Source: Octopus bimaculoides
Lineage: Eukaryota
NCBI RefSeq assembly: GCF_001194135.2
Contig: NC_068997.1
Span: forward strand, 41,148,661-41,212,660
Length of the DNA: 64,000 bases
Direction: 5' to 3'
Part shown: positions 56,704 to 57,455 of the stretch, one piece after another
Numbering within the stretch: the stretch's first letter is position 1
How the letters are laid out: each line of letters opens with the position of its first letter
The notes under the pieces: generated by a model
Database searches by the model: none
The model's input: the letters and a program-made list of their open reading frames with translations, nothing else
Told to the model about the DNA's origin: nothing
Made by a program: the position numbers and the translations under genes

Positions 56704-57455
56704 ATTCTTCCAACTTCCCGAGTGGTTGCTCCTCTCCACTTAACGACTCCCAGGATGGAGAAAGTTATTTTGATTTTACCAAAAGTGACTTATATACTGC
56801 AACTCAGAAAAATGCCAAGTTGGTGCAAGAAACCCTCTTTGATGAAGGTTTGCGTATTGCTCAACAGTACGGCATGGCTGATTTTGCAGAGCAGCTAAAA
56901 GAACTGCAACAGCAAAAACCTAAAAGTAACATTACAGGATATAAAAAATCCATCAACAGAAATATGAATGGAAACTGTAGTCATAAAACTGTGATCAATG
57001 AAGCAGATGATGATGTAATTGAAGACGAAGATGAAGATGTGGTGATAGATGAGTACAATGACAATAACAACAACAATAGTTGTAACAGCACTAGTAATAA
57101 CAACAACAACAATAACATCAACATCAACAATAACAACAGCAGCAGAAACCATTCATCTGGTGAAGAGTTGGAAAATACAAATAATGAAATACTTCCAAGA
57201 AAGAATGGAATTGAAGAAAATGACAGTGTGAAAACTAACCTAGTTAAAAATAACATGATGGCGGGTTATTACGCAGCACTGGAGAGCAAGGACAGTTTCA
57301 AAGAAGATAAACATGATCTAAGGGAAGAATCTATGGCAAATGATATGCTAATAAGAGACAGAAGAATCAAAGATGGCAAAAAATATTGGAGTGGGCCTTT
57401 TGGGCATAGTCTTATCCCAAACGGTGAGAATGGCAACCAACAAATGGATGGTTAG
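56704..57455 (+). CDS. NAB: NAB homologue probable last coding exon (NAB2-like motif, acidic and poly-Asn tail), phase 1 start, TAG at 57453-57455
   Basis: ttttgttttgcAG acceptor and 250 open codons: SSNFPSGCSSPLNDSQDGESYFDFTKSDLYTATQKNAKLVQETLFDEGLRIAQQYGMADFAEQLKELQ...QMDG*. The 3' end is less certain because donor-like GTGAGA (57424) and GTTAGC (57451) sites exist. Confidence 0.85.

What the first reader, a model, noticed from the sequence alone, without database searches (positions are those of the whole stretch)
56817..56910. Ancient C-terminal NAB motif LVQETLFDEGLRIAQQY shared with vertebrate NAB2
Seen: this peptide sits in otherwise low-complexity sequence and is followed by GMADFAEQLKEL. 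Recalled: human NAB2 has ILQQTLMDEGLRLARLV in its C-terminal region, which is implicated in CHD4/NuRD binding, and I do not recall it in NAB1. Conservation between a mollusc and vertebrates implies a third conserved NAB element that predates the NAB1/NAB2 split. It is a candidate minimal co-repressor docking helix.
Basis: partly seen in the sequence, partly recalled or inferred. Interest (0 to 1): 0.7.

Follow-up and report, generated by a model that had tools for sequence, protein, structure and literature searches.

The report
Conserved C-terminal helix motif of NAB co-repressors
The octopus NAB co-repressor gene ends in a short, strongly conserved helix-turn-helix motif whose first half is shared with the part of vertebrate NAB2 reported to recruit the NuRD chromatin-silencing complex, so this is probably an old, unannotated docking module rather than a chance resemblance.

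Summary
Window 56817-56910 (+) encodes KLVQETLFDEGLRIAQQYGMADFAEQLKELQ in the last coding exon (56704-57455) of the Octopus bimaculoides NAB gene (RefSeq 'NGFI-A-binding protein homolog'; NCD1 and NCD2 both above Pfam cut-offs).

A 49-position profile of the motif, searched against 1.84 billion proteins, found 80 hits. Every hit long enough to include an N-terminus is a NAB. All named carriers are Lophotrochozoa: molluscs, nemerteans, a brachiopod and an annelid. Consensus: [ST]LF[DE]EGLRIAQQYG[ML]xDFAxEL, with G, R and G invariant.

A profile built only from non-vertebrate sequences hits real tetrapod NAB2 tails at LQQTLMDEGLRLAR (15-17 bits, p about 3e-7, 0 of 50,000 shuffles). It does not hit mammalian NAB1. 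Only the first half is shared. AlphaFold2 predicts helix-turn-helix in octopus and a single helix in NAB2, each the only ordered island in a disordered tail. No Pfam model and no solved structure covers the motif.

The NAB2 counterpart lies in the published CHD4-interacting domain, on a 192-nt cassette exon. Binding to Mi-2/CHD4 is inferred, not tested. Ecdysozoan NABs could not be tested. This is a real, moderately interesting, apparently uncurated element of a known family.

The parts
56829..56906 (+). Conserved bipartite motif ETLFDEGLRIAQQYGMADFAEQLKEL. Helix 1 core is TLFDEGLRIAQQ, the turn is Y-G-M, and helix 2 is ADFAEQLKEL.
   Evidence: Translation. FDEGLRIAQQYGMxDF is invariant in 18 sequences. 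Column conservation over the 80 representatives. AlphaFold2 helix-break-helix with block-mean pLDDT 84-93.
56832..56861 (+). The sub-segment shared with vertebrate NAB2 (TLFDEGLRIA against TLMDEGLRLA).
   Evidence: hmmsearch aligns profile positions 7-20 to NAB2 LQQTLMDEGLRLAR. Shuffle control. An unsupervised MAFFT alignment of whole tails puts them in the same columns.
56704..57455 (+). Terminal coding exon of the NAB gene, stop codon included. It is entered in phase 1 (G|AT = Asp). The motif sits in a low-complexity acidic, Asn-rich tail.
   Evidence: AG acceptor at 56702-56703 and open frame to the stop. 100% tblastn match to P0138 residues 375-624.
45392..45456 (+). 65-nt micro-exon encoding (R)YQMKNARCSNNGKEYNDDEAT(D). 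It joins either NCD2b or the coiled-coil exon to the terminal exon.
   Evidence: AG/GT boundaries. 100% match to P0138 residues 353-374. Phases fit on both sides.
42360..42565 (+). Coiled-coil exon ERMTAINNEMVSLKQKQDEIKSQLVAAKDAGD...IIKKQRRFE(R). It is skipped in RefSeq isoform X8.
   Evidence: Splice sites. Weak Pfam Nab1 PF04902 hit, E = 0.007. tblastn to Lingula, Gigantopelta and P0145 NABs, E from 3e-11 to 2e-7.
34926..35040 (+). Basic, NLS-like exon (R)ASSDGLSIKRSKFDPALTRQFETNSKFVNAELEKLQRE.
   Evidence: Splice sites. tblastn to Lingula NAB residues 441-471, E = 0.002. Phases fit NCD2b and the coiled-coil exon.
11837..11970 (+). Second NCD2 exon: [44 protein letters not shown].
   Evidence: Splice sites. 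All database relatives carry PF04905. tblastn.
1993..2112 (+). First NCD2 exon in the window: [43 protein letters not shown]1 lies upstream of the window.
   Evidence: Splice sites. PF04905 relatives. tblastn.

Best explanation
The segment is the core of a third conserved module of NAB transcriptional co-repressors. It is a roughly 26-residue amphipathic helix, Gly-turn, helix set in an otherwise disordered acidic C-terminal tail.

Shown here: it belongs to the octopus NAB gene. It is nearly invariant in NAB proteins of molluscs, nemerteans, a brachiopod and an annelid. Its first helix is homologous to the LQQTLMDEGLRLAR helix of vertebrate NAB2. It is predicted to be helical.

Taken from the literature: that part of NAB2 lies in the C-terminal repression domain called the CHD4-interacting domain (CID), which recruits CHD3/CHD4 of the NuRD remodelling and deacetylase complex.

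Inferred: NAB binds an EGR/Krox-type zinc-finger factor through NCD1. The C-terminal helix then folds onto a surface of a co-repressor partner, most likely the C-terminal part of Mi-2/CHD4. That brings deacetylase and remodelling activity to the target promoter. Vertebrate NAB2 kept helix 1, placed it on a skippable cassette exon and lost helix 2. NAB1 lost the recognisable motif.
For: - Gene identity: NCD2 and coiled-coil exons in the window. The product P0138 is RefSeq XP_052829809.1 'NGFI-A-binding protein homolog', with NCD1 and NCD2 far above Pfam cut-offs.
- Conservation: the exhaustive profile search gave 80 hits at E <= 1e-3. All 18 long hits that contain an N-terminal part have NCD1 and/or NCD2. 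G14, R16 and G22 are 100% conserved, and E13, I17, A18, Q20 and F26 are at least 95%.
- Taxa.
- Divergent unnamed variants also lie downstream of NCD2 exons on the same contigs.
- Homology to NAB2: 15-16.6 bits, p about 3e-7, 0 of 50,000 shuffles, E = 0.003 in a six-frame background, and the same columns in a blind MAFFT alignment.
- Phase-1 intron, G|NN, a similar distance upstream in both octopus and mammalian NAB2.
- Structure: octopus helix to Q55, break at Y56-G57-M58, helix A59-Q70, block pLDDT 84-93 against about 40-60 in the flanks. NAB2 has a single helix WSRHILQQTLMDEGLRLARLVSHE, the only raised-confidence stretch.
- Literature: the CID is a C-terminal repression domain of NAB2 assigned to exons 4-7 (PMC11554739, PMC8230482, PMC12393881). 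CHD4 lacking residues 1-1280 still binds Nab2 and acts as a dominant negative (PMC2768752).
Against:
- I could not read the fine mapping of the CID (Srinivasan 2006 is not held). The CHD4 contact could lie in the last NAB2 exon rather than the motif exon.
- As I recall that paper's abstract, NAB1 also binds CHD3/CHD4, yet NAB1 shows no detectable motif. The motif may therefore not be required for CHD binding.
- The most conserved half in invertebrates (QQYGMxDFAxEL) is absent from NAB2. The invertebrate module may do something NAB2 does not.
- The single-sequence reciprocal search is first by rank but not significant.
- No vertebrate, arthropod or nematode NAB reached E <= 1e-3 in the library search.
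Confidence: 0.55

Rival explanations
1. The motif is a genuine ancient NAB module, but it docks a partner other than Mi-2/CHD4, or it mediates an intramolecular or oligomerising contact. Candidates would be another co-repressor or co-activator, an RNA helicase of the DDX23 type reported to bind MAB-10, or SUMO machinery. The NAB2 CHD4 contact would then lie elsewhere in the CID.
For: - NAB1 has no detectable motif, yet it is said to recruit NuRD (PMC3590300, and my recollection of the Srinivasan 2006 abstract).
- The helix-2 half, invariant in invertebrates, is missing from NAB2.
- The CID is only coarsely placed in reviews, at exons 4-7 (PMC11554739).
- NAB2 transcripts that skip the motif exon are common enough to form a 19-member cluster.
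- MAB-10 binds DDX-23 (PMC10584935).
Against: - The only functional annotation of the region that holds the NAB2 counterpart is CHD4 interaction and repression.
- No other partner is known for this tail.
- The motif occurs only in NAB proteins among 1.84 billion representatives, which fits a family-specific effector contact.
Confidence: 0.3
2. The resemblance to NAB2 is convergent or due to chance. The lophotrochozoan motif would be a lineage-specific invention, and the NAB2 helix would have arisen independently in a similar position.
For: - Only about 10 residues are shared.
- Single-sequence search E-values are 0.39 and 0.93.
- No deuterostome or ecdysozoan intermediate could be identified by name.
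- NAB2 was not reached in the library-wide search.
Against: - Profile score p is about 3e-7, and 0 of 50,000 composition-matched shuffles reach it.
- Same protein family, same order of elements (NCD2, linker or coiled coil, motif, acidic tail, C-terminal psi-K-x-E), and the same columns in a blind alignment.
- Phase-1 intron a similar distance upstream in both.
- Both are predicted helices that form the only ordered island in the tail.
- The invariant G and R of helix 1 are kept in NAB2.
Confidence: 0.07
3. The conserved peptide reflects a constraint on the nucleic acid, such as a splicing enhancer or an overlapping transcript, rather than on the protein.
For: None found. Considered only because the element is short and lies in low-complexity sequence.
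Against: - Conservation is at the amino-acid level across phyla whose flanking sequences are unalignable.
- The opposite strand has no comparable frame.
- The motif sits about 125 nt inside a 752-nt exon, away from the splice sites.
Confidence: 0.02

Closest known systems
CHD4-interacting domain (CID) of vertebrate NAB2 (Srinivasan et al. 2006, J Biol Chem 281:15129; named in PMC11554739, PMC8230482, PMC12393881)
   Same: Same protein family and the same position, C-terminal to NCD2 inside a disordered tail. Shares the helix core [ST]L[FM]DEGLR[IL]A, including the invariant G and R. Predicted helical. Preceded by a phase-1 intron.
   Different: NAB2 lacks the QQYG[ML]xDFAxEL second helix. It has its own vertebrate-specific conserved flanks (HGLWSRHI... 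and ...RLVSH[DE]RVGRLSPC). It carries the motif on a separate 192-nt cassette exon, with a further exon after it; in octopus the motif is inside the terminal exon. CHD4 binding has been reported only for the vertebrate protein and was not tested here.
Pfam PF04902 'Conserved region in Nab1' (the NAB1 tail)
   Same: It covers the post-NCD2 tail of a NAB paralogue. Its N-terminal part weakly matches the octopus and Lingula coiled-coil exon (E = 0.007 and 0.0025).
   Different: It gives no hit on the motif-bearing exon at E <= 10 or on NAB2 tails. NAB1 tails score about 0 against the motif profile. The motif is therefore not part of this family model.
NCD1 (PF04904, SAM-like) and NCD2 (PF04905), the two recognised NAB conserved domains
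   Same: Family-wide conserved elements of the same protein. Both are present in the octopus product.
   Different: They are folded domains of about 80 and 125 residues, found in every NAB. The motif is about 26 residues, is not modelled in Pfam, and is degenerate or lost in NAB1.
Tri-helix bundle of the myosin-binding protein C M-domain (PDB 5k6p, 9pfe, 7tij)
   Same: Local string [20 protein letters not shown] against RIAQQYGMADFAEQLKELQ. This is a helix, Gly-turn, helix in a solved structure.
   Different: E = 0.14, not significant. The protein family and context are unrelated. It is a structural analogy only, not evidence of homology.

Membership tests
NAB (NGFI-A/EGR-binding) co-repressor family | NCD2 domain (Pfam PF04905) | tested here: met
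   Window exons 1993-2112 and 11837-11970 encode NCD2. All 120 listed database relatives of that sequence carry PF04905. P0138 scores 174.3 bits against a cut-off of 25.
NAB (NGFI-A/EGR-binding) co-repressor family | NCD1 SAM-like EGR-binding domain (Pfam PF04904) | tested here: met
   NCD1 is not inside the window; it lies upstream. The annotated product of this gene, P0138, matches the window exons at 100% and scores 156.6 bits against a cut-off of 24.3.
NAB (NGFI-A/EGR-binding) co-repressor family | Binds EGR/Krox/LIN-29-type zinc-finger factors and modulates their activity | not testable with these tools
   This needs interaction and reporter assays.
NAB2 CHD4-interacting domain (CID) | Sequence homology to the NAB2 C-terminal repression region | tested here: met
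   The helix-1 core matches NAB2 LQQTLMDEGLRLAR at 15-16.6 bits, p about 3e-7, with 0 of 50,000 shuffles reaching it, and E = 0.003 in a six-frame background. The match covers about 14 residues only.
NAB2 CHD4-interacting domain (CID) | Homology over the rest of the CID (NAB2-specific flanks and last exon) | tested here: not met
   The helix-2 profile finds nothing in NAB2 tails (-3 bits). EFEEGL in the last NAB2 exon gives only 3.8-4.5 bits against helix 1. The flanks are not alignable.
NAB2 CHD4-interacting domain (CID) | Physical binding to the C-terminal part of CHD3/CHD4 (Mi-2), and TSA-sensitive repression | not testable with these tools
No CHD4 sequence could be submitted and no assay is possible.
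NAB2 CHD4-interacting domain (CID) | The motif lies within the experimentally mapped minimal CID | not tested
   The primary paper is not held. Reviews place the CID at exons 4-7 (PMC11554739) or call it truncated when exon 7 is lost (PMC8230482). The motif exon (exon 6 by my numbering) falls inside those limits, but the fine mapping is unknown to me.
Pfam PF04902 Nab1 C-terminal region | Match to the PF04902 model above the gathering score | tested here: not met
   The terminal exon gives no hit at E <= 10. The coiled-coil exon scores 17.2 bits, below the cut-off of 25. Whole P0138 shows no PF04902 hit at E <= 0.01.

The most novel reading that the evidence does not exclude
NAB proteins ancestrally carried a third structured module, an 'NCD3' helix-turn-helix with consensus [ST]LF[DE]EGLRIAQQYG[ML]xDFAxEL. 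It would be the original docking site for Mi-2/CHD4 and NuRD, so that NuRD recruitment by EGR-NAB complexes dates at least to the bilaterian ancestor. Vertebrates would have split its fate between the paralogues. NAB2 keeps helix 1 on an alternatively spliced cassette exon, giving splice-controlled co-repressor strength. NAB1 lost it. The intact bipartite form survives in Lophotrochozoa, which would offer a cleaner minimal peptide for structural work on the NAB-CHD4 interface.
Probability: 0.35. Interest if true: 0.6.

Novelty: new member of a known kind. Interest (0 to 1): 0.45.

Why it matters
NAB proteins set the output of EGR/Krox/LIN-29 factors in myelination, haematopoiesis, developmental timing and fibrosis. 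Loss of the NAB2 C-terminal repression region is the defining event in NAB2-STAT6 solitary fibrous tumours. The CID has so far been treated as a broad, vertebrate-specific stretch.

Cross-phylum conservation narrows its core to about 10-14 residues and names the invariant positions. It gives precise point mutants to test (the G and R of DEGLR, and the LF/LM pair). It suggests the NuRD link may be ancestral. It points to a more complete helix-turn-helix version in lophotrochozoans that may be easier to crystallise or model with Mi-2. It also highlights that mammalian NAB2 carries the helix on a skippable exon.

Tried and rejected
- **Pfam and PDB sequence searches** of the terminal exon gave no hits. 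A PDB search with the motif profile gave only non-significant matches, the best being MyBP-C at E = 0.14. A PDB search with a NAB2 tail found nothing.
- **Word-indexed protein database:** it returned only exon-sized fragments and no full-length vertebrate NAB when queried with the window's NCD2. I therefore used recalled human NAB2 and NAB1 tails purely as retrieval bait, and used only the retrieved real sequences in the tests.
- **Second half of the motif in NAB2:** MAFFT suggested DFAEEL under EFEEGL. A helix-2-only profile gave no support. Rejected as unproven.
- **A degenerate NAB1 copy:** FVVDGELSRLY and [20 protein letters not shown] were considered. Profile scores are about 0 and indistinguishable from shuffles. 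Rejected as unsupported.
- **Arthropods:** the Lasius locus showed nothing within 10 kb downstream of NCD2, but its downstream exons cannot be recognised, so the result is uninformative. The Saguinus NAB1 locus is likewise uninformative because of long introns.
- **Organisms behind the divergent unnamed variants:** cluster names and a literature search for the assembly accessions gave nothing.
- **Primary papers:** Srinivasan 2006, Svaren 1996 and my guessed PMC id for Mager 2008 are not held.
- **Fold search:** not run on the models. A 30-residue helical hairpin would give meaningless matches.

Full report
**1. What is at the coordinates**

Window 56817-56910 on the + strand translates to KLVQETLFDEGLRIAQQYGMADFAEQLKELQ. 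The opposite strand gives nothing comparable. The peptide lies in an open frame that begins just after a polypyrimidine tract and AG acceptor (...ttttgcag, AG at 56702-56703) and ends at a stop at 57453-57455. The window is eukaryotic: it has introns, assembly gaps and TA microsatellites.

**2. The gene**

Upstream on the same strand are NAB exons with canonical AG/GT boundaries and mutually consistent phases.

| Exon | Coordinates | Evidence |
|---|---|---|
| NCD2a | 1993-2112 | |
| NCD2b | 11837-11970 | |
| Basic, NLS-like | 34926-35040 | |
| Coiled coil | 42360-42565 | |
| 65-nt micro-exon | 45392-45456 | |
| Terminal | 56704-57455 | |

tblastn of full-length relatives maps onto exactly these pieces. 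All 120 listed database relatives of the NCD2 sequence carry Pfam PF04905. The annotated product P0138 is 100% identical to the window exons. It is XP_052829809.1, 'NGFI-A-binding protein homolog isoform X8' of Octopus bimaculoides. It scores 156.6 bits on NCD1 and 174.3 bits on NCD2. NCD1 lies upstream of the window. Isoform X8 skips the NLS-like and coiled-coil exons.

**3. How conserved the motif is, and where**

A first search with the exon found 17 exon-sized ORFs. In all of them FDEGLRIAQQYGMxDF is invariant while the flanks are unalignable.

A 49-position profile was then searched by HMMER against all 1.84 billion cluster representatives. It gave 80 hits at E <= 1e-3, and 49 at E <= 1e-10. 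Of the 27 hits of 250 residues or more, 18 include N-terminal sequence and all 18 carry NCD1 and/or NCD2. The other 9 are C-terminal fragments. No non-NAB protein was seen.

Named carriers are:
- Octopus bimaculoides and O. sinensis
- the gastropods Gigantopelta, Plakobranchus, Candidula and Bradybaena
- the bivalves Argopecten, Crassostrea, Sinanodonta, Mactra and Mya
- the nemerteans Lineus and Tubulanus
- the brachiopod Lingula
- the annelid Owenia

Column statistics over the 80 sequences give [ST]-L-F-[DE]-E-G-L-R-I-A-Q-Q-Y-G-[ML]-x-D-F-A-x-E-L. G14, R16 and G22 are at 100%. E13, I17, A18, Q20 and F26 are at 95% or more.

More divergent, unnamed variants exist, such as SLVDEGLRIARQYGLGxEFE, SLLDEGLRISRQYGLG and TLLDEGLRIATQYGMVDFA. 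For two of them (P0186 and P0194), the contigs show NCD2 exons a few kb upstream on the same strand. Their organisms could not be identified.

**4. Is it the NAB2 motif?**

The database does not return full-length vertebrate NABs for the window's own sequences. I therefore used my recollection of the human NAB2 and NAB1 tails only as retrieval bait. I worked solely with the real sequences that came back:
- Tetrapod NAB2 fragments, including a Varanus komodoensis UniRef entry, read ...HGLWSRHILQQTLMDEGLRLARLVSH[DE]RVGR[LV]SPC...VKVE[AP]E[AT]SRQ.
- Named NAB1 entries (Cervus, Rousettus) read ...QPHHFVVDGELSRLY...[30 protein letters not shown].

Results with an HMM built from 57 non-vertebrate instances only:
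- **Profile against NAB2.** It hits four NAB2 tails at LQQTLMDEGLRLAR with 15.6-16.6 bits, per-sequence p of 2-5e-7.
- **Shuffle control.** 0 of 50,000 shuffles of either tested NAB2 tail reach that; the best shuffle scores 10.7.
- **Six-frame background.** Among 11,354 six-frame peptides from all fetched loci, the mammalian NAB2 exon is found at E = 0.003.
- **Blind alignment.** A MAFFT alignment of whole tails, from NCD2 to the C-terminus, puts the two motifs in the same columns.
- **Intron evidence.** The intron upstream of the motif is phase 1 and splits a G|NN codon in both octopus (G|AT) and mammalian NAB2 (CAG G|gtgagt ... cacag|CT). It lies 46 and 35 codons upstream of the D of DEGLR, respectively.

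Limits:
- The shared part is only HMM positions 7-20.
- A helix-2-only profile finds nothing in NAB2.
- The reverse single-sequence search ranks the octopus exon first of 3,371 window peptides, but at E = 0.39 and 0.93.
- No vertebrate reached the threshold in the library-wide search.

I conclude that helix 1 is homologous, with high confidence. The chance or convergence rival gets about 0.07.

**5. NAB1**

Mammalian-type NAB1 tails score about 0 bits. 4,758 of 50,000 shuffles do as well, and neither half-profile finds anything. MAFFT's placement of [11 protein letters not shown]...AFTLEKK under the motif is not statistically supported. Because the motif is shared by protostome NAB and NAB2, it must predate the vertebrate NAB1/NAB2 duplication and have decayed in NAB1. 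That step is inference.

**6. Structure**

AlphaFold2 on the octopus 83-residue segment, with its 18-sequence alignment, gives a helix ending at Q55, a break at Y56-G57-M58 and a second helix at A59-Q70. Block-mean pLDDT is 84, 93 and 85 over residues 41-70, against about 40-62 elsewhere.

For the Varanus NAB2 tail, the only helix in the C-terminal part is residues 110-133 (WSRHILQQTLMDEGLRLARLVSHE). It has the only raised confidence, at about 71-73 against 45-56 elsewhere.

Both behave like an ordered binding element in a disordered tail. Hydrophobic residues recur at i, i+1, i+5, i+7/8 and i+11 in helix 1, and at i, i+3/4, i+7 and i+10 in helix 2. This is read directly from the sequence and fits amphipathic helices.

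**7. Function**

Held reviews name the NAB2 C-terminal repression region the CHD4-interacting domain. They place it in exons 4-7, and they call it truncated when exon 7 or exons 5-7 are lost in NAB2-STAT6 fusions (PMC11554739, PMC8230482, PMC12393881). CHD4 lacking residues 1-1280 still binds Nab2 and blocks its repression (PMC2768752). The NAB2 helix lies on the penultimate coding exon, inside those limits.

The most likely mechanism is that the motif is the conserved core of a co-repressor docking site, probably for the C-terminal part of Mi-2/CHD4. I put this at 0.55. The main rival is the same kind of module with a different partner, at 0.3. Three points support that rival:
- NAB1 lacks the motif yet is reported to recruit NuRD (PMC3590300). 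As I recall the abstract of the unheld 2006 paper, NAB1 also binds CHD3/4.
- The invertebrate-invariant helix 2 is missing from NAB2.
- I could not read the fine mapping of the CID.

**8. Comparison with known families, and novelty**

No Pfam model covers the motif. The terminal exon gives no hit at E <= 10, and NAB2 tails give none. PF04902 models the NAB1 tail and only weakly touches the octopus coiled-coil exon. No solved structure exists. I found no paper in the held library describing a third conserved NAB region or an invertebrate Nab-Mi-2 link. The primary CID paper could not be checked, so prior description cannot be excluded.

I file this as a new member of a known kind. It is the invertebrate, more complete counterpart of the core of the NAB2 CID, in an already annotated NAB orthologue.

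**9. Verdict**

Interest is moderate at 0.45. It is a precise, testable refinement for people working on EGR/NAB/NuRD and on NAB2-STAT6, not a new kind of system.

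Noticed in passing
L009 about 4012-4203 (mammalian NAB2 locus); protein P0244: In mammalian NAB2 the motif sits on a 192-nt exon flanked by phase-1 introns on both sides. P0244, a cluster of 19 member sequences, is a transcript-like NAB2 ORF that joins ...SLDGHLQ directly to EFEEGLLDRC.... It therefore skips that exon and removes the helix in frame.
   Followed up: partly
P0237, P0238, P0246, P0231 (start of the last NAB2 exon): The last NAB2 exon begins EFE[ED]GL, which resembles the F[DE]EGL core of helix 1 (3.8-4.5 bits, p about 0.002-0.003). MAFFT instead aligns it under the DFAEEL of helix 2. 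Whether it is a remnant of helix 2, a second copy or chance is unresolved.
   Followed up: partly
C-termini of P0003, P0004, P0006, P0015, P0144, P0169 and others; NAB1 P0215; NAB2 P0219 and P0237: A SUMO-type psi-K-x-E site lies within the last 35 residues in 21 of 76 motif carriers. It is also in vertebrate NAB1 (IKTEPEDSR) and NAB2 (VKVE[AP]E[AT]SRQ), which fits the reported Krox20-driven SUMOylation of Nab proteins (PMC8301837). It is absent from the octopus tail (window 57351-57452). 18 of 76 carriers end in ...NG[DSN].
   Followed up: partly
P0160 (Owenia), P0008, P0168, P0191, P0195, P0196, P0205: A further short conserved element, DEQxEWNREVEKD, follows the motif by about 20-30 residues in an annelid and in several unnamed sequences. 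It is not present in octopus.
   Followed up: no
window 34926-35040 and 42360-42565: RefSeq isoform X8 (P0138) skips both the NLS-like exon and the coiled-coil exon. These are conserved in Lingula, Gigantopelta and other NABs, so the long isoform is probably the canonical one.
   Followed up: partly
window 52597-53034 (+): A 146-codon ORF (...RLYDVCVRTAMLHGSETWAV...LRWYGHVVRMDE...GRGRPRKTWDEVV) lies in the intron upstream of the motif exon. It looks to me like the C-terminal tail of a non-LTR retrotransposon ORF, but that is recollection only. Pfam gave no significant hit.
   Followed up: partly
window 57590-58325, 61932-62856 and seven smaller N runs: The window contains 1,910 N in nine assembly gaps. 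One starts only about 135 nt downstream of the NAB stop codon, so the 3' UTR is incomplete here. Intron sequence is rich in (TA)n/(TATG)n and (CT)n microsatellites, for example around 20169-20400.
   Followed up: no
PDB 5k6p, 9pfe, 7tij against motif profile A2: The best PDB match of the motif profile is the tri-helix bundle of the myosin-binding protein C M-domain ([20 protein letters not shown]). At E = 0.14 it is not significant. It may serve as a structural analogue of the helix, Gly-turn, helix.
   Followed up: no
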